A stretch of 64,000 nucleotides of DNA from Macrostomum lignano (Eukaryota), in the NCBI GenBank assembly GCA_002269645.1, contig NIVC01001630.1, positions 193,331 to 257,330 on the forward strand. The letters are read 5' to 3'. Below the pieces are notes generated by a model. It did no database searches. It was not told the DNA's origin and saw only the letters and a list, made by a program, of their open reading frames with translations. The position numbers were made by a program, and so were the translations under genes. This document shows, in pieces, positions 10,126-29,727 of the stretch (positions within the stretch are counted from its first letter, which is position 1; each line of letters opens with the position of its first letter).

Positions 10126-13100
10126 TTACTCTTTGTGGATTCCTGCAGTTTTTGCTATCTCAGCATTCAATTTGGACTCGCTTCTGATCCCAGTTTGCTT
10201 CAGAAGTTCCGGGATGCTAGCCGCATTTAGTTGCTTCATCAGGCTTTCAATGCTTCTGATGTTTAGCTGTGCCATCAGATCAGAGACACTGCGAATATTA
10301 AGTTCAGACATCAGACTTTTGACACTTTTTAATCCAAGCGTGTGCAGAAGATCACTTAGTTTTGAGCTGCCCGTCTCAACAATCAGACTGGAGAGATTCG
10401 AAATATGAAACTGCTTCATCAGAGACGTAACATTGCAGATACCAGTCTGTTCCATGAAAGCCTTTAAAGTTGGAAGACCCACTTTACGAACGATTTGCCG
10501 TAGGTTCTTGGCGTCAAGTTGCTTCATTAGTCCTTGAACATCCGAAATTCCCAGCTGACTCATTAGACCTTGGAGATCAGGAATGCGTACTTGTTTCATC
10601 AAGCTCTTAAGGTTCTGAAGTCCGACCTCTCGTAATAGTTGGTGCAGACTCTTTGACCCCAGCTGGTCCATCAGCTTTGGAACGTCGGTAATGTTAAACT
10701 TGGTCATCAACTCTTTAAGATCGTCAAATCCAGCTTCCTTGATTAGAGCGCCCACTGTTCGTACACCGCAACGCTTCAGCAGTTGACGTAGGTTCTTGGC
10801 GTCGAGTTGCTTCATTAGTCCTTGAACATCAGAAATTCCCAGCTGACTCATTAGACCTTGGATATCAGGAATGCGTAATTGTTTCATCAAGCTCTTAAGG
10901 TTCTGAAGTCCGACCTCTCGTAATAGTTGGTGCAGACTCTTTGACCCCAGCTGGTCCATCAGCTTTGGAACGTCGGTAATGTTAAACTTGGTCATCAACT
11001 CTTTAAGATCGTCAAATCCAGCTTCCTCGATGAGAGCGCCCACTGTTCGTACACCGCAACGCTTCAGCAGTTGACGTAGGTTCTTGGCGTCGAGTTGCTT
11101 CATTAGTCCTTGAACATCAGAAATTCCCAGCTGACTCATTAGACCTTGGATATCAGGAATGCGTACTTGTTTCATCAAGCTCTTAAGGTTCTGAAGTCCG
11201 ACCTCTCGTAATAGTTGGTGCAGACTCTTTGACCCCAGCTGGTCCATCAGCTTTGGAACGTCGGTAATGTTAAACTTGGTCATCAACTCTTTAAGATCGT
11301 CAAAGCCAGCTTCCTTGATTAGAGCGCCCACTGTTCGTACACCGCAACGCTTCAGCAGTTGACGTAGGTTCTTGGCGTCGAGTTGATTTATGAGGTCTGT
11401 TAGAGATTTGATTTGTAGTTCGTGTCTCAGGCCACGCAAACTTTTTATTCCGAGTTGCTTTAAGAATGCCATTAGGTTTTTGGAACCCGTTTTTTTCATC
11501 AGTTGTGACAGCTTCTTTACATTTAACTCTTTCATTAGCCCATATACACCCTCAATTCTTGCCTGAGTTAATAAATCTGGAATGCTTGTCACACTTAGCG
11601 TTCGAACTAGATTATTGAGGTTTGGCGAGTTCAGCTTTTTCATCAAAGTGGCCAGGTTTTGAGCCTTAAGGCGTCGCATTAGGTCACGGAAGTTCAGCTG
11701 CTTTAGCTTCTGCTGAAGTGCAGAAAAGCTGGACACCTTCAGAGCATTCATCAGTGTTTCGATATTTCGGCCATTGGCAAGGTGCCTCAGTCCGGGGATT
11801 TTTTTCAGGGCATGTACACTCTTGAGAGGTTCCAAATATTTTGACAACTTGTCAGTTATTCTGTTGACTTTCTCGACGACTGGAATTCTGGATATCGCTT
11901 TTTTAATTAACCTATCGGCAGCTTTGATTTTCTTTAGTCCCGAAATTGATTTGATAACTTTGCGAACTTTTTTCTCCATTCTTCTGAGCTTCCGGAGTCC
12001 CGGAATCCTGTCCAACACTCCCGGGCCGTACTTGTCAACGAGTTTTCTCAGAACAGGGTTCCTGTTTACAATGCCTGTGATCTTGGCGTGTACACCTTTG
12101 ATTTTCGCAACAGCAGGCAGTGCGTTGAGCTTTGCAAAAACTTTTGTCTTTAACGCTGTAAGCTTTTTTACAATCGACAGGCTCTTCAAATTTGCAGCTA
12201 TTTTAGACTTTATTAAAAGAATCTTCTTTACTATCGGTACAGCCTTCAATTTTGTGATGATGAACGTCTTGGCTGCCACAAGCGGCTTTACAAACAGCGT
12301 CTTTGCAGCGGCAGCCGCGACAGCTTTGAATTTAACGACAGCAGCTGCGACAGCTTTGGCTTTAACAAAAGCGGCAGCGGCGGCTTTGACTAGGAATGGC
12401 ACAAAGAAAAATTTTTTTGGATGCCTTCGTGGTTTCTGAAATTATTATTAATAATTAACTCAATTAGTTGGGGTGAATAAATTTAGACAATCAGACAATA
12501 TAGCTGGTATCTCGTAAATGTATTACGTGTTATTCGATAACAACCAATATGAAAGCTAATGAGCGCTACGGTATCAAAAATGTACTATTGAGCGCATACA
12601 TGCGCAACCCCCCTGATTTACACTGGCCATGCGATTTAATTTTTGACCAAAAAATGCGACTTACCTGTGAAAGAAACCCTACAGCAACATTGACGCAAAT
12701 TTTGGGTAAACGGCAGGAGTAACTATAACTGTTCTTTAAGGGCTAAATGCCTCGTCATCTAATTAGTACTACGTCTGTATTCTTTGGGGTGGGCATTTTT
12801 GCAACTCCTGGTCCACCACAATTTACGGTGGCTAGATCGGCCAGGTCAGCCAGCAGTTGCGCATGTATGATTGAGCGTGAGCGTGTGTCTGAGTGCATGT
12901 CTGGCGCTTTGTATCAGGGTGACTACCAGCCCACTTGCAAACTTCTACTTGTCTTATGCCTTATTGATGTTTACTCACATCCAATTCTTGAGGTCCAACG
13001 TACGCGGGCAGATTGGCTGTCTGCAGAGCATCCTTAGACTCTCTGGCCTCCTCGACATCCAAATCTGTTGCTTGACAGGCGACTACAGCGAGCAGCAGTG

Positions 13101-13654: not shown

Positions 13655-14125
13655 CTGGTGCTAAATCCACTGGTGGTAAATCAGCCTGGTGCTAAATCCC
13701 CTTGGTGCTAAATCCCCTGGTGCTAAATCCCCTTGGTGCTAAAGCCCCTGGTGCTAAAGCCCCTGGTGCTAAATCCCCTGGTGCTAAATCCCCTGGTGCT
13801 AAATCCCCTGGTGCTAAATCCCCTGGTGCTAAATCCCCTGGTGCTAAATCCCCTGGTGCTAAATCCCCTGGTGCTAAATCCCCTGGTGCTAAATCCCCTG
13901 GTGCTAAATCCCCTGATGCTAAAGCCCCTGGTGCTAAATCCCCTGGTGCTAAATCCCCTGGTGCTAAATCCCCTGGTGCTAAATCCCCTGGTGCTAAATC
14001 CCCTGGTGCTAAAGCCCCTGGTGCTAAATCCCCTGGTGCTAAATCCCCTGGTGCTAAAGCCCCTGGTGCTAAATCCCCTGGTGCTAAATCCCCTGGTGCT
14101 AAAGCCCCTTGTGCTAAAGCCTAAA
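13655..14125. repeat. 15-bp minisatellite (GCTAAATCCCCTGGT)n
   Basis: Tandem periodicity; explains the AKSPG/VLNPL ORFs. Confidence 0.95.
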
Positions 14126-14166
14126 GTGCTAAATGCTCTATGTCTCATAAAAAAACCTTTAAAATA

Positions 14167-15157
14167 CGGGTGTCCAAAAAGTAGTGATACTTTTAACCGT
14201 AGCTCTCGTTCTGTAGCTTCCTGTGATTTAAAATTTTATGAACTGATAGCGGAAAATCTCTTCTACAGACTGCTTTTTGAATTTTTAAAATTGATACTAG
14301 AGAACAAAAGTTATACCCACAAAAGTAACAGTACCTGTACTATAGAGTTACACAAATTATAGGCTGAGCTTCACGAGATCCATGCCGAGTAAGCTTCGAT
14401 GAATTGTTGATTTCGGCTTGTCCAACCTGTCAGCGATCTCTCTAATGGTCATTCGGGAGTCCTCGTCAAGAAGATTCAGAATGGAGTCCGCCAGTACATC
14501 AGGTCGATGAACGTATGGCCGCCCCGTCCAATGCTGATCTGCCAAGTCAATCCTTCCCTCGCTGAACTGCTCAATCCATCGATAAACTGTCATTTTGCTG
14601 ACCGCAGAGGATCCGTGCGCAGAGCAAAGTTTTGCGTGAATTTCTGAGGCACCATGGCCAGCGCCCCAAAGAGTGAAGATAGTACTTTGCTGAGCAACAA
14701 CTGAGTGCACATTCATGTGTGTTGTCGAGTATGGGCAATGAAATCATGAACGAATCGCAAAATGCAAGCGATCCTCTGTTTGCAAGTAAAGTAATGCATT
14801 TAATGCTTTATTTTTCTGCGCCTGATCCCGTCCATAGATAAATTTCAGTCAGTCACAGTGAGCATCATTTTGCAATTGGGCTTTGGTATTGCTTAAACAA
14901 GACATTTATCGATGCCTTCTTAATGAATGAGTGCAGAAGTCAACTATTATAAATTTCGATATAATTTGTGTAACTCTATGGTACAGGTACTGTTACTTTC
15001 GTGGGTATAACTTTTGTTCTCTAGTATCAATTTTAAAAATTCAAAAAGCAGTCTGTAGAAGAGATTTTCCGCTATCAGTTCATAAAATTTTAAATCACAG
15101 GAAGCTACAGAACGAGAGCTACGGTTAAAAGTATCACTACTTTTTGGACACCCCTCG
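14167..15157 (-). mobile_element. Non-autonomous Tc1/mariner element with ~195-198 bp inverted ends and TA target-site duplication
   Basis: 14167-14361 is the reverse complement of 14960-15157. The intact end reads TA-CGAGGGGTGTCCAAAAAG. TA at 14165-14166 and 15158-15159. Confidence 0.9.
14357..14716 (-). pseudogene. Truncated mariner transposase (paired HTH DNA-binding region only, no DD34D domain)
   Basis: ASEIHAKL..AHG..AVSKMTVYRWIEQF..G..DLAD..TGRP and DSRMTIREIADRLDKPKSTIHR..LGMDLVKL are mariner N-terminal motifs; the frame stops inside the left inverted repeat. Confidence 0.9.
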
Positions 15158-15631
15158 TACAAAATCTGAAACCTATCCGCTCTTGTTTGATATGTTTAGG
15201 CAGACACATTCTTTTGGAGGTAGAGTTAGTTATAAAACTTAGTCAGAGACCCTTTTTTATATTATACTGTTGAAATTTTGCTATATTTAGCTTTGCACTG
15301 AGTCAAAGGTACGTCATTGTCGATTGTACGTCATTGTGCACCAGAAAGGCTTTGAAGAAAGCGAAACGGATTCCCTTTTAGTGCCAGGAGCGCAAAATAT
15401 CAGCCCACTGCAGGACCCTAATAGAAGATTAAATCCGTCTTTTTCATAATTTCTTGCATCGCTCCGTGTTACAAAATCCTTGATTACTTAGCGAGCTCGG
15501 CCTTCTAAATTCATGAGATGCGCGCAAACGAGAGAAGAAGTATATATATAAACTAAAATATCGTCGATTTACGAGCTAATTTTCGTCCTTGTTATTTTTC
15601 TTCAAAAGATTGCTTACCTGCAAATTGAATC

Positions 15632-16606
15632 ATGCGCTTAAGGAGTCAAATATTTTTCGGAGTCTGTCTAGCTGTGTTGCTAGTGACTCAGGTCTGCTGC
15701 GACAGCGAGAAAAGTCATACTGACGATTTCGATGAGCAGCTGGCAGAGACGGCCAAAAGCTTGGTCGATAGCGAAATTGGTACCGCTGAAGATCCGTTTG
15801 CAGATTTCGATGTGAGTCTAAACCCTTGGAGTTTGTTGCCTCAAGAAGGCGGGTAGATGAGAGAGGAAAAGAGAGGGAATGAGGGAAGGAGAAGAAAGAT
15901 GAGATAAAATATGAGGGAGAGAGGGATGAGAGAAGGTGTTCACGGCTGTTCACTCCAAGGACTGGGGGGTCGCCACACACACCCTCAATTACCCAGCTAA
16001 TGCTGGCACCCATTTTACAGCTGGGTGAACTGAAGCAATGCAGAGTTAACTGTCTTGTTCAGTGACACAAATTGTTCCAGTGGGATTCGGGAATCGAACC
16101 CCCGACCTTCAAGTCTTTGACCACTAGGCTACAACCCTAGCTGCGACACGAGAGGAGAGGAGAGAAAAGGATAGCAAAGAGGAGAGATAAGATGAGAGAG
16201 GAGAGAAGGGATAAGATAGGAGAGAAGAGAGCTGAGAAGAGACACAAACCTCAATCGAACGGGCTTGCTATTGTAAAGTTTCAAAGGACCCGAGGACGGG
16301 ATAGAGAGGCTTCATGGGCAGCATGTGGACGTCGGGTCGGAGTTGTTAATCTTGTTCAATAGATTTCCGGACCAAAGCTAAAGTCTGAAGTTGAAAAAAA
16401 GTTCTAACTTCTGCGAGCATCTCTTATGTTTTTTGTCCCATTGTCCGACAAGTGACCGATTACATTCGGTCAGGGTCTTTACCTCGGGCTCTGTTTAGGA
16501 ACTTAAATTGACGTTCCCTTCTATAGTATCATTACAATACAAGCTATCTACTAAACTACAGGATGCGGAGAGGCTGACAAAGAAGTGGCAAGAAGTGGAC
16601 GAATAA
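15632..16606 (+). CDS. Secreted acidic prepro-peptide B (exon 1 firm, exon 2 tentative)
   Basis: Exon 1 15632-15811: MRLRSQIFFGVCLAVLLVTQVCC DSEKSHTDDFDEQLAETAKSLVDSEIGTAEDPFADFD|GTGAGT, phase 0. Candidate exon 2 16562-16606 (CTACAG acceptor) gives DAERLTKKWQEVDE* with AATAAA overlapping the stop. Confidence 0.6.
15940..16138 (-). mobile_element. tRNA-derived SINE with CORE-like domain
   Basis: Minus strand: A-box-like TAGCCTAGTGG (16131-16121), B-box GGTTCGATTCCC (16100-16089), then GAACAAGACAGTTAACTCTG...CAGCTGTAAAATGGGT resembling the CORE-SINE domain. Confidence 0.7.
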
Positions 16607-16849
16607 AGGACGGTTCGGCAAAATGAATAACTTTTCAATATTAAAGTTGTTTGCTGTTTCAAAATCAGTGAAACATCGGCGCGAATTTTTGCTAAATAAC
16701 ATCTGATAAATTTGTAATTATTATAAATATATAGTCTCGATAGGTCAGTTTTCTTCTAACTAAAGGCTGTTGGATTGTCGATTTTTTATTTTAAATTTCT
16801 GCTACATGTAGCCATCTACCTGTAAATGTGGGTATCTCTATGTTACTCT

Positions 16850-17420
16850 TTCCCTCAGATTTCTCAGATCTCCCTCAGATCTCCCTCAGATCTCCCTCAG
16901 ATCTCCCTCAGATCTCCCTCAGATCTCCCCGAGATATCCCTCACATTCCCTCAGATTCCCTCAGATCTCCATCAGATCTCCCTCAGATCTCCCTCAGATC
17001 TTCCTCAGATCTCCCTCAGATCTCCCTCAGATCTCCCTCAGATCTCCCTCAGATCTCCCTCAGATCTCCCTCAGATCTCCCTCAGATCTCCCTCAGATCT
17101 CCCTCAGATCTCCTTCAGATCTCCCTCAGATCTCCCTCAGATCTCCCTCAGATCTCCCTCAGATCTCCCTCAGATCTCCCTCAGATCTCCCTCAGATCTT
17201 CCTCAGATCTCCCTCAGATATCCCTCAGATCTCCCTCAGATCTCCCTCAGATCTCCCTCAGATCTCCCTCAGATCTCCCTCAGATCTCCCTCAGATCTCC
17301 CTCAGATCTTCCTCAGATCTCCCTCAGATCTCCCTCAGATCTTCCTCAGATCTCCCTCAGATCTTCCTCAGATCTCCCTCAGATCTCCTTCAGAACTCTA
17401 AAATCTCCCTCAGATCTCCC
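16850..17420. repeat. 11-bp minisatellite (CAGATCTCCCT)n
   Basis: Tandem periodicity. Confidence 0.95.
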
Positions 17421-17464
17421 AAAGAGGAACCCTCTTCCCTGGCCTTCTCCGAGTGCCTTCCAAG

Positions 17465-17615
17465 TGACATTTGACTGTCAGTGACACTTGACTATCAGTG
17501 ACATTTGACTGTCAGTGACACTTGACTATCAGTGACATTTGACTGTCAGTGACACTTGACTATCAGTGACATTTGACTGTCAGTGACACTTGACTATCAG
17601 TGACATTTGACTGTA
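17465..17615. repeat. 17-bp dimer repeat (CAGTGACACTTGACTAT/CAGTGACATTTGACTGT)
   Basis: Two 17-mers alternate. Confidence 0.85.
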
Positions 17616-18247
17616 CAGATTTCTAAATCTGTACCTGCAGGGGGTCGAGTCCTCATATGCGACACTAATAAACAGCGCTAAAATTTCACTCAAATGATGA
17701 AAAAATCACTGAAAAAACTTAGGAGACAATATATAGGAGCTGATCAGAGAATATAGCGCTCGATATTCTCTGGAGCTGATTGACGGCTGTCTGATCGCAA
17801 ATTAATCTATTTCTACCATAGATTGCTCAAAGTACGTATTAAATTAGCGTCTCAAAGCCATTTCCCTTAGCTTCAACTTGCTTCATTTTTGCTACCCAAA
17901 ACCAACACAAATTAAAAGCATCTGCACAACACGGATCTTCTAGCAAACTTCAAACCTGGATTTGGATGAGTTAGTAGTTTATTTTGCTTGTGATTTTTCC
18001 AACCGGAGACAGCTGAACTAATAAATCATGGATGCTTTTCATCACAATATTTTCTTGTCTACAATTTCAGTGATCCTATTGTCTTTGTTTTGCTGCACAG
18101 TTTTTATTCTCTGAATATTCATTTTACATTGTGCCGAAGGGCGTAGACTATCAATGGCCAGTATGAGCTAGTTTAGCTAGCAGGTTAAACGATCTATTAG
18201 GGGGAGGGGCGAAAGAGACTGAGATATAAGAGCAGGGAGACACACAC

Positions 18248-18251
<4 letters not shown>

Positions 18252-18311
<60 letters not shown>
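18252..18311. repeat. (AG)n microsatellite
   Basis: Direct. Confidence 0.95.
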
Positions 18312-18316
<5 letters not shown>

Positions 18317-18639
18317 GGAGTGATATTATTCACATATGCTAAATATTTAATTTACTATCTATACGCTACTATCACGATATGATATCCTCTGCCGTAATAC
18401 ATGTTGCAAAGTTATAGCAATTCTATCGTGATTAAGGTTATGAGAAGTCTTATTTGAAAAAAGTAATAGCTCTTATTTAACTACCCATGGAGTAGCTAAT
18501 ACATGAGAATAGTTTATTTTTTGTATACGAGTGTACTATCAATTTTTCAATCAACTATATTTTTTATGGAAAACGGGTCTGATCAACTGGTTAAACGTAT
18601 ATCAAAGTTTTGTAAACGAAAGTTTTTTTTTGTTTTTTC

Positions 18640-19310
18640 TTATTCCAACTCGCCAAAATCGTTGCCACCCTCAATCTGTGGTATCGGGCCGGGCGGCGGT
18701 GGCGGCCTATTCGGCGTCGTAGCTGGCGGCGGCGACTCAGTAGTAACGCGCTGCGTTGTTGGCGGACGGGCTGTTGTCAAAGATGCTCGAGTAGTTTTAG
18801 GTGTCGGTGGAACCATAGTCTTCCTTGATCTTCCGTTCCGGCGCCATCCTCCCCAGTGGCGTCGCCAGGGTCGTCCCCAACGGCCGCGACCTCGACCCCA
18901 GATCGGCCGACGTCGATTCCACCCATATCGTTTAAAAACCCGCTTGATTTGTTTTGCTGCACGCCGAATCCTTCTGAATCGGGACTGTTTCTCCGCTTGA
19001 TCGATTTCCTGTTTGTTTATTTTTTGGTATCGTTATTTTATGTAGACATGAACTAGCGAAATTCAAAACAACGAGTCGGTCGCAAAAAAACTTACGTCAT
19101 CTTCTCCATCTTCGTGGTCGTTAGGAAGGCTTTCCTCAGCTGAAGAATCTTGACTTTCAGTGGCTTCCTCTTCACTGTTAATATCGTCGATGGCTTCAGC
19201 TAGTTGATGGTCTTCACGCTCTGCAGGGTCATCGTGGTAGCGGACGGCGCTACCTGTTGCTAGTGGCAGCAGCTTGGCGGTAAGAAGCGCTGCATGGCAA
19301 GAAATCGCAT
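18640..19310 (-). CDS. Secreted prepro-protein C: acidic propiece, Arg/Trp-rich cationic peptide, Thr/Pro stalk (1-nt frameshift in the signal peptide as assembled)
   Basis: Exon 1 19310-19096: MRFLA(fs)AALLTAKLLPLATG SAVRYHDDPAEREDHQLAEAIDDINSEEE...EDGEDD|GTAAGT. Exon 2 19008-18640 (AACAG acceptor, phase 0): EIDQAEKQSR FRRIRRAAKQIKRVFKRYGWNRRRPIWGRGRGRWGRPWRRHWGGWRRNGRSRK TMVPPTPKTT...ELE*. Confidence 0.75.
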
Positions 19311-19867
19311 ATTTTTGTATTTTCTACCGGCTGTAAAGAAGAGAAAGTATCAGAAATTAACTCGGCTCCGAGATACAGCTTAAGCGAAAATTTATTTTAA
19401 AAAGATTTCTTTTCGAATTCCCGGATTTTCATACTCAATGAAGTCCTGGATATGCAGAGCCAACAGTTGTTTTGAATTGGCGAGTCACTACTAATAGCAT
19501 CATAAAGTTTTTTTTCCGAAAAAATTTCAAACAGAATGAACGAGGCATAAGATGCATCTGCAGTCAAGCTCAAGTATCACCTGTGTGTATTCCAATGTTT
19601 TACTCTTAATAGACACCTCAATAGTCGTAGCGCGAGACTAAATAGTAGAAAAAAAAGTGAGGATTAAGGCTGGCGCATTTTGCTCTTAAGTCTTTCTCGT
19701 TTTCAAAGTTCTTAGAACCGCGTATGCGAAAATATTGTCATTTCAGCTTTTTTATTTCAGTCGGACAATCGAAAATAATACGACACCAGAAACCAAGAGA
19801 TTTAAAGAGTTAAGTTAGATTTTGACTTAAGACTTTTACGACGCTTTTCTCGCTGAAGGCAGCTAGG

Positions 19868-21760
19868 TTAGAATGTGCACAGAGTCTTGACAGATCGGCA
19901 GCAACCACTCTGACACTGTCCGCAGTAGGTCTTAGCGTTTCCAAGGTCATTATTGTCTCGCAGGTACTTGATATAGTCCTTCCATCCTGTGCACGTGTCG
20001 CCCCAGGAGTCACCCCAGAAGCAGCTCTCGTCGGCTTCGGGAGCGGAGGTGTCGCTAGCGCACTGGCCGTCCCAGTTGCAGCTCTTCTTGTTGCCGCAGG
20101 GTGTGCCAACGGGGGCCCGGAGACCGCCGCCAGTCACTCCGCTTGAAGAGCCGGCGGTCGGTGTGCAGAAGATCTTGGCGCAGATCAGTGCCGGATTAGA
20201 AGAGACGTCATCAGTGAGGAAGAACTTGCCCGGACTGGATGGATAGGCGAGGCGACACACCTGGTCCAGGGTCATGCGACCACCTTCGCGAGTCGTTGTA
20301 GCCACAGAGGAGTCTGGAGAGCCTTGACGCGACTTCAAGCACTCGGCCTTGCCTAATAAGTTGTAAATTTTATAACTATTTGTAATTTTTCAATAATTTT
20401 GCAAAAAGCCTGTATGTTAGATCAAGGACCACTATGAACACTAGGAACAAGTCTAGTAGTCCTTGTGTTAGATTTGTGCTGCGTACCTGTAGCCAGATAG
20501 TTTTTCATGAAGGTCACTGTGCAGGGAGAAAACCTATACGAGTTGGCGACGTCGCTAAGGGAGTATGACCCCGCAGAAGGCGACATTAGGAACTTGTAAG
20601 CCACTTTGCACGCCGGTTGGTCATTGTCGTGATCGGATCCCATGTTGTGGGCCAGCTCGTGAGACGCTGTGCCCCAGCTTTGCAAGCCCTGGTCCTCATT
20701 GATGCTAACTCGCGTGTCCTGACAGGCGCCTCCAACGTAAGCCATGCCGCACACTGCGGTGTTGCCGCCACTCTGGATATCCGTGCGCGTAAACGCCATC
20801 ACGTGATCGGCAGTCTTGCCAACGGCGTAAGACTTGATGTAGCCGAGGATTGCACTGGCGTCGGTTGCTGTTCAGTAGCGGATTGAGGAAGTGATAATTT
20901 AATAGATTTAGCTATTTCAGAATTATTAGCAAAATTTATCGTACTTACCGTCAGACGAACCAGCTGGAGGCATCCATTGCGAATCAGCCTGCGTCTTTGC
21001 CACGGTGAGGCCGGTGCACTTGACACTCATAGACGGGTTTCCGACGTTTCTGAACGCTGTATCGATTCCGTTCAAAATGTGCGTGTAATAATAGTGAAGC
21101 TCTGTCATAGCTGCAGCATCAGTGCTGTAAATTGTCTTAAACGCGTTCCACACAGTGTGGTCCAGAAGCAAAAGGAGCTCCACCTCAAGATCTGTAGCAG
21201 CTTGATTGGACTGACGCTTCTTGCGGCTCATTACTTGCATGACCTTCGACTTGTCAATCTGCGACTCAATACCGTCTGGCTGGGCAATGTTGCGTGTGAC
21301 TTGATGCTCTGAAGCACCGCTTGGCTTGACGAAATAGGATGTACCTTCGTGCATCACGTGACCGCTGAAGCGTTTCTTTCCCTTCTCGTGTCGAACACTG
21401 ATGACAGACTTGCTCTCGATGTCCCTGTAGTGAGCGTGACTCGCGTGGTGAGCTTGGCGAGCTGAAAAAGTCCTGGAGACTCCATTCTCTCTCACGGTCA
21501 TTGGCACACTCTCAAAGGCGTCAGTCTTTTCCAATGGAATGCGGACCTTCTTGTTCGTGCTGGGCAGCTGTACTTCGATCTCCATAGACGAAGGATGCGG
21601 TCCATCGTTGCTGGATCGAGTCACAGACACTGAAGCCTGGGCCGCAGCAACAGCGAGCAGAAATATGACTGCAAAATTGATAGATAATTACGCTGAAAAC
21701 TTGCTTCGATGTTTGTTGTGACACATGAATGATAAATCACTACTTACCAAGGCGCAGCAT
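19868..21760 (-). CDS. Secreted M12B (ADAM/ADAMTS-like reprolysin) zinc metalloprotease, copy 1
   Basis: Exons 21760-21748, 21668-20949, 20867-20487 and 20352-19868, all with phase-1 GT-AG introns. Signal MLRLVIFLLAVAAAQA, furin site SRKKR, HELAHNMGSDHD zinc motif, LMSP Met-turn, ADAM Cys-rich domain (TLDQVCR...CGNKKSCNWDGQC), Cys-rich tail. Confidence 0.9.
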
Positions 21761-23159
21761 TTTCAGAGCGCTGGTCAAAACGACAATTTGTAGGTTTCTG
21801 TTCCACTCAGACACAAGGTTTAAGTGGGCTTATCTTTATCGGCAAGGATCAACCACTGACCGTCTTCGTTTTTATGCTTTTGATCGCAGTTGTAGCGGAT
21901 ATTGGTTAAGCACAATTAATTCCTGGCCACGACTTTGGCAACAACGATTGCCAGCTTGGACTTGACCAACTATAGTCATTGAAATGCCAGAACTTACCAG
22001 TCCGGATATTAAATTCCGTAAATAAAAGATTACCCTTCCACGACCCATGACGCTACTAAAGATTTTCGAAAAAAAATGTTCGTGAGAGCGCATCTTCTCG
22101 GTCTCATAAATGCCATTAAAACTAAAAAAATCAAGCACCAGCAATTTCCGGGGATTGTTATTCCAACTGAAGTCGATCGTTTTTTTAAAATTCAATTCGT
22201 GTCGAACTTTCTTGAACACTTCGACACGTTCGAATTTAAGCTGTAGCATGAGATGCAGGGCAAAATTTCAAATCCATAGCATGCTTGATGGATTCGATCA
22301 GGCAACGAGTCAATAAACATTCTTGATTAGTAGAGTATAAATTTTATGCACTCCCAAATTTCAAAATTTAGGAAATATTACTACTCTATAATGTTAGCAT
22401 TTTAGCAAATCAGTTGCTTCGCAGAAGTTTCAGAGGGTTAAATGACTGGATTTTTCATGCTTGATGATACAACAACTGTTGAAAGGTTTGAAATAGCCGC
22501 ACTGTATAAACGCTTTGACATATCGTTGACAGCGAGCGTACGAGTCGTATATCAGTTTGAAGCTGTCCAGAGCACCCCGGGAAGAGTATGCATGACGCAT
22601 GGGAATGCAATTTTCTATATGTGAGCGTCCACACATTCCATTTCGTTTCCTGACTTGCACTAATTATTTTTTAACACTGCATCAAAGTATTTATACTTGT
22701 GGTTCGTCAAACCGACCATCGATCAGAATTCGTATTCACGAGCTTGTAGACTGCAATAAAAAAATTACAGACAAGAATTTCTGTAGCATTGGAGAATAAT
22801 TGTTCGATACTTTCGAATTTTCTTGGAAATAATCTATCGAGGTGAGACTTGAGTTTTTTTTAATTTTTTAATTTCAACAAAAACTTCTTGAGAGAAAAAA
22901 AAGTTAAGTATAATAGAGATAAGTATAGGCTAAAACTGGATCAATATGATAGATTGGGCAAGCATAACTCCACCCAAAGCTAGCTAGCTGGTAGCACTTG
23001 TTCAAGCACGAGTTAAAACAAGTTAAACTCAATACATAGAAATTTCACTTCCGTACATTGTCCGCATTCCACTGCGAGAACAGATCTTGCGTTTATAAAA
23101 AACTAAAAAAACGCTACTGGCAAAAAAGTATTAAAGATAATCATTTTATTCATACTTAA

Positions 23160-23862
23160 CACGCCTCCCCTGAAGAGAGAATTCGGTCGATAAAATATGC
23201 CCTGAAAACTACTGATTTCCCATGAATCCATGACCCAGCAGAAGTCCAAAAAAGCAATCCTAGAAATCCTATCGCATTGTCTGCACAGTGTACAGGTATG
23301 CAAAATATTACAGTGACTTTAGTTGATATCGGTATAGAATGAAACTAATCCATTCTGCCAGAGCCTCAGAAGTTGGCCTTTCATGGCTGAGTATCGCCTC
23401 AGGCCAATCGCACGGAATCGAACCAACTATACATGCATACATTTTTTCGCAAGAGGCAGCTGCTCAGCCTCTCAATTGCTTCATCAGTTGTTTATTATTA
23501 AAGTGCAGCCGAGCTCTGGCAGCCCGTCTCTATTCTGTCCAGCTCTCGGCCTGCCCAGGACAGTGCGGGACTCACATATAGGCTGATTTTGGATTTCACA
23601 CGGTTTATCTGTGCACTGCGGCTGCCTGGCTTTTTTATTGCATTTTGCACTTGGTGACCGGCACTTTAGCATTTCACTGCTGAGATTTGTCAACTCGAAA
23701 GCTCAGCTTCTCTACTCTCCATAAGATCCCAGCTCAGCTTCTTTGTTCTCTATCAGATCCCAGCTCAGATCATGCAGACTCTGCTGGGTCATGGATTCAT
23801 GGGAAATCAGAAGTTTTCAGGGCATATTGTATCGACCGAATTCTGTCTTCAGGGGAGGCGTG
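23160..23862. mobile_element. Non-autonomous TIR element with TTAA target-site duplication (piggyBac-like MITE, 703 bp)
   Basis: TTAA|CACGCCTCCCCTGAAG... at left and ...CTTCAGGGGAGGCGTG|TTAA at right; ~83-bp imperfect inverted repeats (23160-23242 vs 23780-23862). Confidence 0.8.
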
Positions 23863-24325
23863 TTAAGCCCATTCAATTAGAACTTTATAGCAATACAATC
23901 CGAACTAAAAGTTTTTGTACAATCAATTCTATCCAATCAATTTAATACAGCGTTTGTTGGTAAGTTTCGATAACAATACATGCATGCTCTCCAATAAATG
24001 TTTCGTTTAATCGTAGATTAACTTCATTCAGATACAGCCCAGAATAGCACTAACACAACTAACTAGTCCTACAAGCAACATGCGCTCAAGGACAACTATG
24101 TATGTTAGTTAAGTAGTCCTTGCATGCGCTGCGGCAGCTTTATAATTAATAAATTGCCACAATATTTTTACCAAAACAGACACGCCTTGACTGATTAGTC
24201 TTTCTTTTTATGCATTTATTCTCCTCTTTTGTATTTTTCTATCCGGTATGTTTCTATTAACGATGTAATAATCTCTATCTTCCGCTTCAGTGCCCGCACA
24301 CGCGGCAGCGAACCAAAGAAAACCG

Positions 24326-26317
24326 ATGAAAATGCTGAAAATAGGTGAGTTAACCACAGAACATACAGAAGCTCTGTGGAGTCAACTGCATATGCTTCAG
24401 GAAATTAATTACGTATGTTTACGAGTCGTACGTGCTCAATATTTTAGCTATATTTCTGGCCGTCTCTGCGGCAGCCCAGGCCTCGGTGTCCGTGACGCAA
24501 TCCAGCGGTGACGGACCTCACCCGTCCTCCATGGAGATCGAGCTCCAGCTGCCCGACACCGACAAGAAAGTCCGCATCCCGCTGACCAAGACTGCTCCGT
24601 TGGATGGCGCTGTGGTCACTGTGACGGACGGTGGAGTCTCCAGGACGTTCTCTGGCCGACAAGCTCAACACGGAGATCAAGCTCACTACAGAAACGTTGA
24701 TAGCAAGTCAGTGATCAGCGTTCGACACGAGAACGGCACAAAGCGCATCAGCGGTCACGTGATGCACGAAGGCACCTCGTATGTCATCCAGCCGATCGGC
24801 GACTCTGGGCACCGCGTCTCCAAAACCAGCGAAACCGCGGATGAGCCGCAGCCCGAGCAGTTGCTGAGTCGCAAGAAACGCCGAGTGAACCGAGAGGCTA
24901 CCGAATACGAAGTTGAGATCCACATCCTCATTGATCACACCGTTTGGAAGGCTTTCAAGACAATTTTCGGTACAGATGAAGAAGCCCTGACTGAGCTGCA
25001 CTTCTACTATTCTCACATTGTGATTGGCATGGACACGGTCTTCAGGAACATCGGCAGTCCGTCAATCAGTGTCAGGTGCATTGGGTTAACAGTAGCCAAG
25101 ACTGAAGCCGATGCAAAGTGGATGCCACCGGATAGCTCGGCTGATGGTACGCGCTTTAGTGCGCTTTTGTCTTACTTGACATACCTGAATTAGCTGCAGG
25201 GGGTTCTGGGCGTCCGGAAACAGCGAAAAGGCGTTGAGAGAGTAGTAATTTGAATAATGTGTAATTTAAAAACTATTTCAGCGTTGAAGTGTTCTCTCAA
25301 ACAGATTTTTTAGCAAGCGATGGTGGTGCCACTCTCGGCAGAATCCGAGCGTACTCGAAAGGCGACAGAGCCGATCACGTGATGGGCTTCACCCGGAGAG
25401 ATATTTCGCTAGGCAAGAACTCTGCGGTGACAGGAGTCGCTTTTGAAAATAGCGCCTGCCAAGAGACGAAGGTCAGCGTTGTCGAAGATTCCGGCCTCCA
25501 CAGCTGGATGACGGCCGCGCACGAGCTCGCGCACAACTTGGGGGCCAGTCACGATAATAACGAACCCGGATGCGAAATGGATCTGAAGTTCATAATGTCG
25601 CCTGCCGCTACATCCTACGATCTCAGCAACATAGCCAATTCCTACCGGTTCTCTCCGTGCACAGTGGGGCAGATCAGGACCTATCTCGACTCCGGTAAGT
25701 TTTTCGCGTTTCTTTGAGTTGTTTTATTTCTAAGGAATTGTCTAATTTGGAAATCAGAGCTTTTCTTAAGCTTTGACGCAAAGAAGTGAAAAACATTGAT
25801 ACGTCAAAAATATTTGAATGCCTAACCAGGAAAAGCAGCGTGTCTGCAGTCTCGTCAAGGCACCCCCGTCAGCCAACTGACAAGCTCTGTCCGCGAAGGA
25901 GCTCGCATGTCCCTCGATCAGGTGTGCCGTCTCAATTACCCATCGAGTCCCGGCAATATTTTCTTGACGGAGGACGTTAAAGCAAACCCGGCTCTGATGT
26001 GCGCCAAAATGCACTGCCTCTTGAAGGCCGACCACGCACACGGAACAACTAGCACCGGCTTCCGCGCCCCAGTCGGGTCGCCCTGCGGCAACAAGAAGAG
26101 CTGCAATTGGGACGGCCAGTGCGTTGCCGACGAAGCAGCACCCGCTGCAGACGAAAGCTGCTTCTTTGGCGACATATGGGGCGACCAATGTGGGGGGTGG
26201 AAAACCTACATCGAGTACCTGCGCAACACGGATCAAAAATCTCAACGCAGGAGCTACTGCGGCCAGACGCAAACGAATTGTTGCGCTAGTCTCAAGAATT
26301 TGTGTCGGTTTGATTAA
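24326..26317 (+). CDS. Secreted M12B (ADAM/ADAMTS-like reprolysin) zinc metalloprotease, copy 2
   Basis: Exons 24326-24344, 24448-25146, 25314-25694 and 25830-26317, same intron positions as copy 1. Signal MKMLKIAIFLAVSAAAQA, SRKKRR, HELAHNLGASHD, IMSP, ADAM Cys-rich domain; AATAAA at ~26468. Confidence 0.9.
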
Positions 26318-26913
26318 GCTTGGTGGGAAAAAAAGTTCCAAAGAAATTACCAAGCAACTCATAGAACTGCGAAAATAGATTGAAAACTTTTGGAGTAAAA
26401 TTTGGGATCTTGCTGAGTTATCAAAAATGTCTCGTTTTCTTCAATTTCGTGAAACTCTGACACCGAAAATAAAAAAATACGTTCATAAATTGATTGAAGG
26501 TAATACTTTTTAAAGTTTTAATATGAGTAATATGTACCGCATATTTAATTTTTATTCATTTTTATTTTAATCAAGTGTACTGCATTTCGAATTCGTTATA
26601 TTTTCTGCAGCTATATTTTAATTAAACAAATTTTATACAATTTAGCTTGCAACTTACAATATTTTATACAAAAGCTATTTAAAATGGAATACATCTCCTG
26701 CACCTCACGAAAAACTATATATAGGCTTGAAAATTTAATCAAACTTAATTAAAAGTAACTATTATACGAATATAATCCCTTGCAGAAGTAGCGATTCCGA
26801 TTAAGGTAGTCTTTTTCACTGGCACTTTTTCAGCAGCTAGAGCATCATGGCGGTGACCGATTAAAGGGGCGGTCGCATCGCACAGGAAGCCAGCTGCTTT
26901 ACTTTACTTTATG

Positions 26914-27125
26914 GTAACAGCGACTCAAAGCCCCGCTTCCGGCAGCGCCGTGCAAAGACAGTCTCTGGTAACAGCGACTCAAAGCCCCGCTTCCGGCAGC
27001 GCCGTGCAAAGACAGTCTCTGGTAACAGCGACTCAAAGCCCCGCTTCCGGCAGCGCCGTGCAAAGACAGTCTCTGGTAACAGCGACTCAAAGCCCCGCTT
27101 CCGGCAGCGCCGTGCAAAGACACAG
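26914..27125. repeat. 54-bp tandem repeat x ~4
   Basis: GGTAACAGCGACTCAAAGCCCCGCTTCCGGCAGCGCCGTGCAAAGACAGTCTCT repeated nearly identically. Confidence 0.9.
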
Positions 27126-28621
27126 CCATTTATATTTTTTTCCCTAGTGAGTAAAAACTTATTTAAACTGAATAATGAACGATGAATACGATGATTGCTA
27201 AGCATTAAATACTACTGTCAGTAAGATAAAATGTGCATGCAGTAATGGTTTTCTTTCCAATGTCACAGACACCATCGCTACTATCAGCGGGAGAAGTGCC
27301 GCCAGCGGCGACAGCAAAGCCGAGCTCCCAATTCAGAAAGCGAGCGAGTATTCAGTTGGATTCTCAGCCTCAAAAGCGGAACAACCATCGCCCCCGTTCA
27401 GCAAAGTCGAAAACCAACTACCGCACTGACTGCTCTCCCGAATCTGATGACGAAACCGAATCAAGTGGATCAAACTGGTCCGAAGATCAGCGAGAGCTGG
27501 ATGATGGACAATTTAAAATCAAAGCATATAATCAAAGCTTTGGTATTGGTATCAAAGCTGTATAAAAGCCCACATTTTCTTGTCTGGGGTCCAAGCAATG
27601 TGCATAAAATGTACTGCTATATACAGATACGGCAGAATATGCATGATCTGATCGTGATGTGAAAATTAAGCCGTTGTCAGTGCAAGAGTTACAAGATCCT
27701 CGCTTTGAAGCATATAATTTGAGCTTAGTATCTCATCAAAAGCTTTTTGCTCTTTTCTGTAACCTTCAGAGACCGCTGGCATTACACAAAGTTTACATTT
27801 GAAGAGCAATAAATTGACTATTAAATCACATCAATACGAAATATTTTTTGCCTTATAATATACACAATTATGTGGTTTTATGAAGTATTTTTTACTGTCT
27901 TTTAAATATAAAATAATTATGCAACACAAAATACGATAGCCATGAGTAAGTTAATGAAGTGCGCGGTTAGGTAGGCTCAATCAGTTGTTAATTTGAATTT
28001 GCTTTTTTAGGCCGTGCTGCATGTGTAATTAATTTTGAATGCACAATAAGCAAAAGCTACACAATACATAAAATATTAGAGTAAACATTATTTACAGAAC
28101 ACATACTATGTACATGTTCATGCAAAATGTTTCTACTTAACCTAAAGTATACAGATCTAGATATAGTCAATTACTTTATCAAATTCCGTTTGTAAATTTA
28201 GAGAATTACATGCATGGCTACAGAACTATATAGGTACTACCATCGCATGTATATGAATTAGAGTCAATATAGTTAAACAAAAAATGCCCACTCAAAACCG
28301 TTGGTCGAATATCAGTGTTTAGAAGTTTTTTCATGTACCTTTCTAGCATTTTTACGCATTTTGATTCCATTGTTTGCAGTCATGGATATGCATCGGTCAC
28401 ACGTGTCTGAAAGTTAGCGATTACGAATAGTTTTAATAATCTGGAGTTACTAAACAATAACTACATACCTGATTCAGCCTGTTCTAGAGATATGAATTCA
28501 GGCAGAAGTCTAAACCTCTTTCAAATATCTTAAAGAACCATGCGGATATAAAAAAGAGCTTCGGTACTTTAACTGAAGTGAAGTGGCGCCTCTTAAAGCG
28601 AAAAGCACGCTGCACCTTTCT

Positions 28622-29580
28622 GAAGTGTCAATCATCCTTCCCAAAGTGTCAACCATCCTTCCTAAAGTGTCAACCATCCTTCCCAAAGTGTCAACCATCC
28701 TTCCCAAAGTGTCAACCATCCTTCCCAAAGTGTCAACCATCCTTCCCAAAGTGTCAACCATCCTTCCCAAAGTGTCAACCATCCTTCCCAAAGTGTCAAC
28801 CATCCTTCCCAAAGTGTCAACCATCCTTGCCAAAGTGTCAACCATCCTTCCCAAAGTGTCAACCATCCTTCCCAAAGTGTCAACCATCCTTCCCAAAGTG
28901 TCAACCATCCTTCCCAAAGTGTCAACCATCCTTCCCAAAGTGTCAACCATCCTTCCCAAAGTGTCAACCATCCTTGCCAAAGTGTCAACCATCCTTCCCA
29001 AAGTGTCAACCATCCTTCCCAAAGTGTCAACCATCCTTCCCAAAGTGTCAACCATCCTTCCCAAAGTGTCAACCATCCTTCCCAAAGTGTCAACCATCCT
29101 TGCCAAAGTGTCAACCATCCTTCCCAAAGTGTCAACCATCCTTTCCAAAGTGTCAACCATCCTTTCCAAAGTGTCAACCATCCTTCCCAAAGTGTCAACC
29201 ATCCTTCCCAAAGTGTCAACCATCCTTCCCAAAGTGTCAACCATCCTTCCCAAAGTGTCAACCATCCTTGCCAAAGTGTCAACCATCCTTCCCAAAGTGT
29301 CAACCATCCTTCCCAAAGTGTCAACCATCCTTCCCAAAGTGTCAACCATCCTTCCCAAAGTGTCAACCATCCTTCCCAAAGTGTCAACCATCCTTCTCAA
29401 AGTGTCAACCATCCTTCCCAAAGTGTCAACCATCCTTTTTGAAGTGTCAACTATCCTTTCTAAAGTGTCAACCATCCTTTTTGAAGTGTCAACCATCCTT
29501 CATGTAGTGTCAACCATCCTTCATGTAGTGTCAACCATCCTTCATGTAGTGTCAACCATCCTTTTTGAAGTGTCAACCTC
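28622..29580. repeat. 21-bp minisatellite (AAAGTGTCAACCATCCTTCCC)n
   Basis: Tandem periodicity; explains the KVSTILP/MVDTLGR ORFs. Confidence 0.95.
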
Positions 29581-29727
29581 TTTTCAAATTAAAATCCTTT
29601 TTCCTGAACTGGTAGTTTTCGCCATTGTCCACCCCACTAAGGAGATAAATTGATGTTAAAAAGCTGTACTTTTTCACATATTGCCTAATATATGTATGCG
29701 AAAATATAACAGTTATATCCATAATTC

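What the first reader, a model, noticed from the sequence alone, without database searches (positions are those of the whole stretch)
18640..19310. Hidden Arg/Trp-rich cationic peptide precursor with a charge-matched propiece
This gene is absent from the ORF track. The predicted mature region after KQSR is FRRIRRAAKQIKRVFKRYGWNRRRPIWGRGRGRWGRPWRRHWGGWRRNGRSRK: 53 aa with 19 Arg, 4 Lys, 6 Trp and no acidic residue. The propiece has 24 Asp/Glu, nearly neutralising the 23 basic residues. An amphipathic helix joined to a Trp/Gly/Arg segment and a Thr/Pro mucin-like stalk suggests a tethered host-defence or nucleic-acid-binding peptide. Counts are from my translation; function is inferred.
Basis: partly seen in the sequence, partly recalled or inferred. 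Interest (0 to 1): 0.85.

Follow-up and report, generated by a model that had tools for sequence, protein, structure and literature searches.

The report
Unannotated flatworm charge-block ORF lacking ATG
The window is flatworm (Macrostomum lignano) DNA, and the two-exon reading frame for an acidic-then-very-basic Arg/Trp-rich protein is really there, but the proposed ATG is out of frame and nothing yet shows that the protein is made.

Summary
The window is the last 64 kb of a Macrostomum lignano scaffold (Mlig_3_7).

**Confirmed**
- Minus-strand exon 1 (to 19096), an 87-nt GTAAGT...ACAG intron, and exon 2 (19008-18640).
- The 53-aa block with 19 Arg, 4 Lys, 6 Trp and no acidic residue.
- 24 Asp/Glu upstream of it, and a Pro/Thr tail downstream.
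- FRRIRRAAKQIKRVFKRY is a strongly amphipathic helix (muH 0.99; 5 of 5000 shuffles reach it).

**Not confirmed**
- The ATG at 19310 is in another frame and stops after 16 codons.
- The long frame has no in-frame ATG, GTG or TTG before the basic block.

**Three ways to supply a start, all unproven**
- The ATG-terminated spliced leader joined at the TAG at 19326-19324.
- The first micro-exon of the upstream reprolysin gene spliced to 19290.
- A one-base indel.

**Evidence against a gene**
- Codon use is background-like (GC3 0.45, against 0.64-0.66 in neighbouring genes).
- The hydrophobic leader is weak.
- Neither genome annotation calls it.
- There is no homologue among 1.84 billion representative proteins.

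**Other points**
- A second scaffold copy is identical, but it lies in a 2.4-kb low-divergence tract, so it says nothing about selection.

**Verdict**
- It is a plausible orphan secreted-peptide gene, roughly as likely to be untranslated. Interest is modest.

The parts
19331..19336 (-). TTACAG preceded by the pyrimidine tract tttctcttcttt. This is the candidate spliced-leader (SL) trans-splice acceptor. The exon would start at 19330.
   Evidence: It matches the published M. lignano trans-splice acceptor motif [T/C]TNCAG (PMC8629364). With this site the SL AUG reads MPVENTKICDFLPCSASYRQAAATSNR and then stops, out of frame with the long ORF.
19324..19326 (-). TAG that closes the long frame upstream. 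If it were used as a 3' splice site (exon start 19323), the SL-terminal AUG would be in frame, giving M-KIQKYAISCHAALLTAKLLPLATGSAV...
   Evidence: TAG acceptors are used locally: intron 3 of the neighbouring gene ends in ttattag. Use of this site is inferred, not shown.
19308..19310 (-). It is out of frame and opens only a 16-codon ORF that ends at 19262-19260.
   Evidence: The bases are identical in the second scaffold copy L001.
19290..19292 (-). CAG, a candidate cis acceptor (exon start 19289). It is phase-compatible with the phase-1 donor of the upstream reprolysin gene's first micro-exon.
   Evidence: Joining 21760..21748 to 19289 gives an uninterrupted 191-aa ORF, MLRLALLTAKLLPLATGSAVRYHDDP.... 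This is inferred only.
19243..19323 (-). Leader-like, moderately hydrophobic segment KIQKYAISCHAALLTAKLLPLATGSAV.
   Evidence: The best 9-residue KD mean is 1.78, against 3.41 for the neighbour's signal peptide. It is helical in the AlphaFold model.
19096..19242 (-). Exon-1 part of the acidic block (RYHDDPAERED...HEDGEDD). It ends at the donor GAC|GTAAGT.
19009..19095 (-). 87-nt intron, GTAAGT...AAACAG. It contains the alternative TAG acceptor at 19055-19053, which would give an immediate stop.
   Evidence: Local introns measure 79, 81, 134, 135 and 158 nt, with GTAAGT or GTACGC donors. The only difference from copy L001 across 861 nt spanning this gene is 19019 T>C, inside this intron.
18979..19008 (-). 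End of the acidic block plus the putative processing motif: EIDQAEKQSR.
18925..18978 (-). Cationic amphipathic helix FRRIRRAAKQIKRVFKRY.
   Evidence: muH is 0.99 and peaks sharply at 100 degrees. All 8 hydrophobic residues fall within a 140-degree arc. Shuffles reach it in 4 of 20000 and 5 of 5000 trials. It is the highest-pLDDT helix in the model.
18820..18924 (-). Arg/Trp/Gly/Pro-rich segment GWNRRRPIWGRGRGRWGRPWRRHWGGWRRNGRSRK.
   Evidence: It is predicted disordered.
18640..18819 (-). Pro/Thr-rich tail TMVPPTPKTT...GPIPQIEGGNDFGELE plus the TAA stop.
18513..18518 (-). AATAAA, 122 nt downstream of the stop codon. This is the candidate polyadenylation signal of this transcript.
   Evidence: Divergence between the two scaffold copies resumes here.
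19391..19396 (-). AATAAA about 60 nt upstream of the TTACAG acceptor. A second AATAAA lies at 19756-19751. Both are candidate poly(A) signals of the upstream gene.
19868..21760 (-). Upstream reprolysin-like (M12B) metalloprotease gene on the same strand. It has four exons. The first micro-exon is 21760..21748 (ATGCTGCGCCTTG), and the stop codon is at 19870-19868, 537 nt before the TTACAG site.
18503..19000 (+). Antisense 165-aa ATG-started ORF. It is regarded as a by-product of the stop-poor composition.
   Evidence: It has no homologues and no gene call on record.

Best explanation
This is most likely a real but unannotated small gene restricted to Macrostomum. It lies 0.54 kb downstream of a reprolysin-type metalloprotease gene, on the same strand.

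**How the mRNA would form (all inferred)**
- The 5' end is probably made by RNA processing rather than by a promoter-proximal ATG.
- It could be spliced-leader trans-splicing in an operon-like unit, or splicing from the first micro-exon of the metalloprotease gene.
- Either route would supply the initiator AUG that the genome lacks in frame.

**The predicted product (about 190-200 aa, largely disordered)**
- A weak hydrophobic leader.
- A polyanionic block (24 D/E).
- A polycationic block: an 18-residue amphipathic helix followed by an Arg/Trp/Gly-rich stretch.
- A Pro/Thr-rich tail of the kind that is often O-glycosylated.

**Proposed mechanism (inferred)**
- The protein enters the secretory pathway of a gland cell.
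- The acidic block neutralises the cationic block during storage.
- After release or proteolysis, the cationic helix and Arg/Trp segment bind anionic surfaces such as membranes or polyanions.
- This is how charge-balanced host-defence propeptides work.

**Shown versus inferred**
- Shown: the ORF, the splice and poly(A) signals, the charge blocks, the helix periodicity and the genomic context.
- Inferred: transcription, the start codon, secretion, processing and activity.
For: **Gene signals**
- The two open frames are joined in phase by a canonical GTAAGT...CAG intron of locally typical length.
- An AATAAA lies 122 nt after the stop.
- A TTACAG acceptor matching the published trans-splice motif lies 537 nt after the upstream gene's stop. 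That is within the 1-kb operon criterion.

**Possible sources of the AUG**
- The M. lignano SL ends in ATG. In flatworms the SL AUG serves as initiator for some mRNAs, with more than 40 cDNAs in S. mansoni.
- SL joined at TAG 19324 gives an uninterrupted 199-aa ORF.
- The upstream micro-exon joined at 19290 gives an uninterrupted 191-aa ORF.

**Protein-level order**
- The amphipathic helix has muH 0.99. Shuffles reach it in 4 of 20000 and 5 of 5000 trials.
- All six Arg codons and all four Pro, Thr and Gly codons are used, so the bias sits at the protein level.
- Block charges are -21 and +23. This matches the charge-balance pattern described for defensin and cathelicidin propeptides.

**Context**
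- The neighbours are secreted proteins: two reprolysins and a 74-aa acidic secreted peptide.
- The missing annotation has a plausible cause: without an in-frame ATG, only a 58-aa ORF is visible to ORF finders.
Against: - There is no in-frame start codon in the genome.
- The acceptor that best fits the trans-splice motif (19331) puts the SL AUG out of frame.
- No upstream cis exon with a good donor was found.
- Synonymous codon use is near the uniform-synonym null (-0.075, against a null of -0.11 +/- 0.036) and far from gene-like (+0.097 +/- 0.029). Cross-validated neighbours score +0.035 to +0.049.
- GC3 is 0.45, against 0.64-0.66 in the neighbours.
- The leader is only weakly hydrophobic.
- The region is stop-poor in other frames too.
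- No homologue turned up in two very large protein searches, and there is no paralogue in any fetched locus.
- The gene is not called in the Mlig_3_7 annotation, and no matching product is present among the UniRef M. lignano proteins searched.
- The identical second copy is uninformative. It lies in a 2365-nt tract with only 2 differences, and that tract also covers untranslated sequence.
Confidence: 0.4

Rival explanations
1. It is not a translated gene. The frame would be a chance or decaying ORF in a stop-poor, compositionally biased stretch. That stretch might be the 3' region of the metalloprotease transcription unit, a non-coding downstream transcript, or a recently frameshifted pseudogene whose ATG at 19310 was once in frame.
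For: - There is no in-frame start, and the only nearby ATG is offset by 2 nt.
- Codon use and GC3 are background-like.
- Shuffles are stop-free in 1-2% of trials per exon. The +1 frame and the antisense strand are also largely open.
- There are no homologues, paralogues or annotation.
- One extra T in the TTT run at 19304-19302 would restore MRFSCHAALL... behind a TTACAG acceptor and an ATG with A at -3. This fits a frameshifted allele or an assembly error.
Against: - The strong amphipathic periodicity is unlikely for random sequence.
- The intron is canonical and frame-preserving, and a correctly placed AATAAA follows the stop.
- The frame is intact, with the same bases, in two scaffolds.
Confidence: 0.37
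2. It is a secreted structural or adhesive gland product rather than a defence peptide. As a block polyampholyte, its opposite charge blocks would condense it in secretory granules or on release (self-coacervation), and the Pro/Thr tail would be glycosylated.
For: - The opposite blocks are nearly equal, at -21 and +23.
- The chain is mostly disordered.
- It has a Pro/Thr tail.
- Its neighbours are secreted proteins.
- From my own knowledge, not from the tools: M. lignano adhesion relies on charged secreted proteins.
Against: - It has the same weaknesses as the main explanation: the start codon, the leader and the codon use.
- A discrete amphipathic helix is more typical of membrane- or partner-binding peptides than of bulk coacervate proteins.
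Confidence: 0.1
3. It is an intracellular nucleic-acid-binding disordered protein. An arginine-rich helix and RG repeats would bind RNA or DNA, and an acidic block would act as auto-inhibitor or chaperone-like region. The N-terminal segment would not be a signal peptide.
For: - The leader is weak.
- RGRGRWGR and other Arg-rich motifs are present, next to an Arg-rich helix.
- From my own knowledge: arginine-rich helices with Trp occur in RNA-binding peptides and in viral capsid N-termini.
Against: - No RNA-binding domain or Pfam hit was found.
- A Pro/Thr mucin-like tail and secreted neighbours fit an extracellular product better.
- No viral or transposon features surround it.
Confidence: 0.08
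4. It is a neuropeptide-type prohormone. After KR, the sequence YGWNRRRPIWG-R and the overlapping WGRGRGRWG-R each show a W-x6-W-Gly-basic pattern. That pattern recalls Wamide/myoinhibitory peptides, which carry a C-terminal amidated Trp.
For: - Trp spacing is 7 and 7 residues. Gly followed by a basic residue comes after the second Trp of each unit.
- An acidic spacer precedes the block.
- The resemblance to the Wamide signature is recalled from memory and is only a lead.
Against: - The candidate peptides contain internal RRR or RGRGR runs that convertases would cut.
- There are no repeated, spacer-separated copies.
- The signal peptide is weak.
- No homology to any known prohormone was found.
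Confidence: 0.03

Closest known systems
Charge-balanced cationic host-defence propeptides (alpha-defensin and cathelicidin precursors)
   Same: An anionic pro-region of about the same size and opposite charge precedes a highly cationic segment (-21 against +23). This is the pattern behind the 'charge balance hypothesis'.
   Different: - It has no cathelin domain and no defensin cysteine framework. The basic block has no Cys.
- No sequence homology was found.
- A charge of +23 over 53 aa is far above the +4 to +12 quoted for avian cathelicidins.
- The processing site is weak, and the start codon and signal peptide are unproven.
Linear amphipathic alpha-helical cationic peptides, and Trp/Arg-rich peptides (indolicidin and tritrpticin type)
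   Same: It has an 18-residue helix with a very high hydrophobic moment, followed by a Trp/Arg/Pro/Gly-rich stretch.
   Different: The likeness is in composition and periodicity only. The peptide is embedded in a 190-200-aa protein with a Pro/Thr tail. Activity is untested.
Flatworm mRNAs that take their initiator AUG from the spliced leader (Cheng et al. 2006, as cited in PMC9851317 and PMC12582326)
   Same: The M. lignano SL ends in AUG. A 3' splice site exists (TAG 19326-19324) that would place that AUG in frame with an ORF that otherwise has no start.
   Different: The adjacent acceptor that fits the motif (19331) is out of frame. No SL-containing read could be examined. The published examples cited here are from Schistosoma.
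Downstream genes of M. lignano operons (Ustyantsev and Berezikov 2021, PMC8629364)
   Same: It is on the same strand as the upstream gene and less than 1 kb from its end. It has a TTACAG acceptor after a pyrimidine tract, with AATAAA signals upstream.
   Different: Trans-spliced M. lignano genes are reported as mostly conserved genes, whereas this one is an orphan. Membership needs SL reads.

Membership tests
Protein-coding gene (generic criteria) | In-frame initiation codon in the genome | tested here: not met
   ATG 19310 is out of frame (16-codon ORF). There is no ATG, GTG or TTG in the long frame before Met 18816.
Protein-coding gene (generic criteria) | Canonical, frame-preserving splice sites and a poly(A) signal | tested here: met
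   The intron is GTAAGT...ACAG, 87 nt, phase 0. AATAAA lies at 18518-18513. Local introns measure 79-158 nt.
Protein-coding gene (generic criteria) | Codon usage like other genes of the genome | tested here: not met
   The RSCU score is -0.075, near the uniform-synonym null. GC3 is 0.45, against 0.64-0.66 in the neighbours. The training set was small, about 1000 codons from two paralogous genes.
Protein-coding gene (generic criteria) | Homologues, or conservation under purifying selection | tested here: inconclusive
   Both protein searches gave 0 hits. The second scaffold copy is identical in the CDS, but it lies inside a 2365-nt tract with only 2 differences. No genomes of other Macrostomum species were available.
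Protein-coding gene (generic criteria) | Transcript or protein evidence | not testable with these tools
   No gene is called here in the annotation, and no gene call is on record for the sub-ORFs. M. lignano RNA-seq could not be queried.
Charge-balanced cationic host-defence propeptide | N-terminal signal peptide | tested here: inconclusive
   The leader has Lys in its hydrophobic core. The 9-residue KD mean is 1.78-2.0, against 3.41 for the neighbour's signal peptide. No dedicated predictor was available.
Charge-balanced cationic host-defence propeptide | Anionic propiece that offsets the cationic segment | tested here: met
   The blocks carry -21 (24 D/E, 3 K/R) and +23.
Charge-balanced cationic host-defence propeptide | Defined processing site that releases one mature peptide | tested here: inconclusive
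   KQSR is only K-x-x-R. Nine dibasic sites lie inside the proposed mature peptide.
Cathelicidin / defensin families (homology-defined) | Cathelin domain or conserved cysteine framework | tested here: not met
   No Pfam family reaches its cut-off. The basic block has no Cys.
Amphipathic alpha-helical cationic peptide | Helix with segregated hydrophobic and cationic faces | tested here: met
   muH is 0.99 at 100 degrees. The hydrophobic residues fall within a 140-degree arc. Shuffles reach it in 4 of 20000 and 5 of 5000 trials. It is helical in the AlphaFold model.
Amphipathic alpha-helical cationic peptide | Membrane or antimicrobial activity | not testable with these tools
   This needs a synthetic peptide and assays.
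SL-AUG-initiated flatworm ORF | SL ending in AUG, and an acceptor that places it in frame with an ORF lacking its own start | tested here: inconclusive
   The SL ends in ATG. TAG 19324 gives an in-frame 199-aa ORF, but the motif-matching TTACAG at 19331 gives a 27-aa out-of-frame ORF.
SL-AUG-initiated flatworm ORF | SL-containing reads at the junction | not testable with these tools
   No M. lignano read data were accessible.
M. lignano operon, downstream gene | Same strand, under 1 kb from the upstream gene, with a trans-splice acceptor motif | tested here: met
   The acceptor lies 537 nt after the upstream stop codon, and TTACAG fits [T/C]TNCAG.
Wamide / myoinhibitory-peptide prohormone | Several W-x6-W-Gly units, each flanked by dibasic sites, behind a strong signal peptide | tested here: not met
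   There are two overlapping W-x6-W-G-R units with internal Arg runs. They are not separated copies, and the leader is weak.

The most novel reading that the evidence does not exclude
The frame is a genuine, lineage-restricted flatworm gene whose initiator AUG is added only at the RNA level. The AUG would come either from the spliced leader joined at the TAG that otherwise closes the frame, or from the first micro-exon shared with the upstream metalloprotease gene. The product would be a self-neutralised Arg/Trp-rich amphipathic peptide. That would be a first host-defence-type peptide family from a free-living flatworm, and invisible to standard ORF finders.
Probability: 0.12. Interest if true: 0.65.

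Novelty: new member of a known kind. Interest (0 to 1): 0.3.

Why it matters
If it is real, it would be an orphan secreted peptide gene of a model flatworm that both existing annotations missed because its start codon is not in the genome in frame.

- **Annotation.** It would show that ORF-based annotation of organisms with an AUG-terminated spliced leader can systematically lose small genes.
- **Biology.** It would give a testable candidate for a cationic effector peptide in a phylum where few are known.

If it is not real, it is a useful caution. In this repeat-rich, compositionally patchy genome, long multi-frame ORFs with striking composition arise easily.

Tried and rejected
- **Homology.** A word-indexed HMMER search and a full HMMER search of 1.84 billion representatives with the 193-aa product gave no hits. 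Pfam gave only sub-threshold compositional hits, DUF4633 and Sigma70_ner. PDB sequences gave only a designed coiled coil at E = 0.006.
- **Antisense ORF as bait.** I used the antisense 165-aa ORF to look for gene calls on transcripts of relatives and found no hits. Exact look-ups of the antisense ORF and the 58-aa C-terminal ORF were not on record.
- **Paralogues.** tblastn against the window, a third reprolysin locus (L003) and four transcript contigs of a related species (L004-L007) found only low-complexity noise.
- **Upstream cis exon.** I searched for an upstream exon that would supply an ATG. Only weak donors turned up (GTAGTG, GTGACT), so this was rejected.
- **Selection from the second scaffold copy.** This was rejected because the identity tract (20888..18523) also covers non-coding sequence.
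- **Relation to the neighbouring 74-aa acidic peptide gene.** BLASTP gave E = 0.26, and 971 of 2000 shuffles reached the score, so this was rejected.
- **An amphipathic acidic helix pairing with the basic helix.** This was not significant: 1223-5711 of 20000 shuffles reached it.
- **Transposon, virus or RNA-gene origin.** There are no inverted or direct repeats, no tandem repeat inside the ORF, no Rfam hit, no tRNA and no SL RNA gene in the window.
- **Literature.** Searches for the peptide strings and for the neighbouring gene identifiers found nothing.
- **Bacterial promoter and terminator scan.** This is irrelevant for a eukaryote.
Full report
**Source and context**

The window is eukaryotic. 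A spliced reconstruction of the gene just upstream of the finding matches a Macrostomum lignano protein at 99% identity (BOX15_Mlig018498g1, a reprolysin/M12B metalloprotease). All close relatives are also from M. lignano.

The locus fetched for the second reprolysin gene is 100% identical to window 14293..36317. By the coordinates, the window is the last 64 kb of scaffold NIVC01001630.1 of assembly GCA_002269645.1 (Mlig_3_7). M. lignano is described as a hidden polyploid that has recently undergone genome duplication (abstract of PMC10468722).

**The observation**

On the minus strand one frame is open from 19323 to 19096 and ends at GAC|GTAAGT. An 87-nt intron ends in AAACAG. Exon 2 (19008..18640) continues in phase to TAA.

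- The 53 residues after KQSR have 19 R, 4 K, 6 W and no D or E.
- The preceding block has 24 D/E, with net charge -21. The basic block has net charge +23.
- The tail has 16 Pro and 12 Thr in 59 residues.
- The alternative acceptor at 19053 gives an immediate stop.

The start is wrong. ATG 19310 is in a different frame and yields MRFLAMQRFLPPSCCH and then a stop. The long frame is closed upstream by TAG 19326-19324 and has no ATG, GTG or TTG before Met 18816, which lies beyond the basic block. This is why a mechanical ORF list shows only a 58-aa fragment.

**Is it a gene? Evidence for**

- The splice signals are canonical, and the intron length is typical of the locus. The neighbouring gene introns measure 79, 81, 134, 135 and 158 nt, with GTAAGT or GTACGC donors and CAG or TAG acceptors.
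- An AATAAA lies 122 nt after the stop.
- Upstream, TTACAG at 19336-19331 follows a pyrimidine tract. It matches the published M. lignano trans-splice acceptor motif [T/C]TNCAG.
- That acceptor lies 537 nt after the stop codon of the co-oriented reprolysin gene. This is inside the 1-kb criterion used to call operons in this species. AATAAA signals sit at 19756 and 19396.
- FRRIRRAAKQIKRVFKRY has a hydrophobic moment of 0.99, peaking sharply at 100 degrees. Only 4 of 20000 shuffles of the segment reach it, and only 5 of 5000 shuffles of the whole basic block when the best window is taken each time.
- The same stretch is the most confident helix of a low-confidence, mostly disordered AlphaFold model (mean pLDDT 60).
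- The amino-acid bias is not a DNA repeat. All six Arg codons are used (7, 5, 5, 4, 3 and 2 times), and no repeat is detected there.

**Is it a gene? Evidence against**

- Synonymous codon use scores -0.075. This is close to a uniform-synonym null (-0.11 +/- 0.036) and far from gene-like recoding (+0.097 +/- 0.029). The cross-validated neighbours score +0.035 to +0.049.
- GC3 is 0.45, against 0.64-0.66 in the two reprolysin genes. The training set was small.
- Composition-matched shuffles are stop-free in 2.3% and 1.1% of trials for the two exons.
- The spliced +1 frame has only 3 stops and carries an AUG-started 85-aa ORF. The antisense strand carries a 165-aa ORF.
- The N-terminal hydrophobic segment is weak, with a best 9-residue Kyte-Doolittle mean of 1.78-2.0. 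The neighbour's signal peptide scores 3.41.
- No gene is called here in the NCBI annotation of either scaffold copy.
- Nothing similar exists in the protein collections, which do contain M. lignano UniRef predictions.
- No paralogue exists in the window or in any fetched locus.

**The second copy**

Scaffold NIVC01001390.1 (L001) carries the same locus. Across 861 nt around the gene it differs at one intron base, 19019 T>C, and it has the same out-of-frame ATG. This argues mildly against a random assembly error.

It says nothing about selection, however. The two scaffolds differ at only 2 positions between 20888 and 18523, a stretch that includes untranslated sequence. The flanks differ at roughly 2%.

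**How could it start?**

Three models each give an uninterrupted ORF.

1. *Spliced leader.* The M. lignano SL, CGGTCTCTTACTGCGAAGACTCAATTTATTGCATG, joined at TAG 19324, gives M-KIQKYAISCHAALLTAKLLPLATGSAV... (199 aa). Flatworm SLs end in AUG, and in Schistosoma mansoni more than 40 cDNAs need that AUG as initiator. But the motif-matching acceptor 7 nt upstream puts the SL AUG out of frame, giving a 27-aa ORF.
2. *Shared micro-exon.* The first micro-exon of the reprolysin gene (ATGCTGCGCCTTG, with a phase-1 donor), spliced to CAG 19290, gives MLRLALLTAKLLPLATGSAV... (191 aa).
3. *Indel.* One extra T in the TTT run at 19304-19302 puts ATG 19310 in frame, giving MRFSCHAALL... (194 aa).

No upstream cis exon with a good donor exists. 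None of these models can be tested without reads.

**Most likely function**

If it is translated, the product is a leader, a polyanionic block, a cationic amphipathic helix with an Arg/Trp/Gly stretch, and a Pro/Thr tail.

The closest functional analogy is the charge-balanced propeptide of cationic host-defence peptides. In that reading the helix and the Arg/Trp segment bind anionic surfaces once freed from the acidic block.

Membership in any homology-defined family fails. The proposed 53-aa mature boundary is weak, because KQSR is a minimal site and nine dibasic sites lie inside it.

The alternatives are:
- a self-condensing secreted gland product;
- an intracellular arginine-rich nucleic-acid binder;
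- a Wamide-like prohormone, suggested by two overlapping W-x6-W-G-R units, which I rate as unlikely.

**Verdict**

The sequence feature is real and its anatomy is mostly as described, but the gene model lacks a start and expression is unproven.

I put about 0.4 on a real secreted charge-block peptide gene with an RNA-level or mis-assembled start. I put about 0.37 on an untranslated or decaying ORF. The remainder goes to other functions of a real gene.

It would be a new member of a known kind, and interest is modest (0.3).

Noticed in passing
window 10126..12402 (-): A 758-aa ORF built from tandem units of about 96 aa (LMKQLDAKNLRQLLKRCGVRTVGALIKEAGFDDLKELMTKFNITDVPKLMDQLGSKSLHQLLREVGLQNLKSLMKQ...). 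Its only Pfam hits are weak or repeat-driven (MgtE_N, E = 3e-15).
   Followed up: no
window 21760..19868 (-) and about 24293..26317 (+): Two divergently oriented reprolysin-like (M12B) metalloprotease genes, about 60% identical. All their introns are in phase 1. A third pair lies on another scaffold (L003).
   Followed up: partly
window 15632..16606 (+): An annotated 74-aa, two-exon gene for a small secreted acidic peptide (MRLRSQIFFGVCLAVLLVTQVCC...). It is not significantly similar to the acidic block of the finding.
   Followed up: yes
window 20888..18523 compared with L001: The two scaffold copies differ at only 2 positions over 2365 nt, while the flanks differ at about 2%. The tract ends at the AATAAA at 18518. 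This points to gene conversion or recent shared ancestry of this segment.
   Followed up: partly
window 57980..64000: This stretch is 98% identical to L003 1..6035, on scaffold NIVC01000208.1. The assembly therefore holds near-duplicate copies (haplotypes or duplicated-genome copies) of this end of the scaffold too.
   Followed up: no
window 181..2559, 13733..14362, 16826..17484, 28510..29653, 38025..40355, 41124..42635, 44030..45381, 47119..47784, 49875..50738, 53871..54781, 56170..59338: Many repetitive, low-complexity tracts produce long open frames in several frames and on both strands at once. Tandem Repeats Finder, run only over 15000..24000, confirmed the 16826..17484 tract as an array of 11-nt units. 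These tracts are a general source of false ORFs in this genome.
   Followed up: no
window 19112..18777 (-), spliced +1 frame: The same spliced transcript model carries an AUG-started 85-aa ORF in another frame (MEKMTKSIKRRNSPDSEGFGVQQ...LEHL). This shows how stop-poor the region is.
   Followed up: partly
window 19016..19021 (-), inside the intron: An AATAAA inside the 87-nt intron is the site of the only difference between the two scaffold copies in this gene. L001 reads AACAAA there.
   Followed up: no
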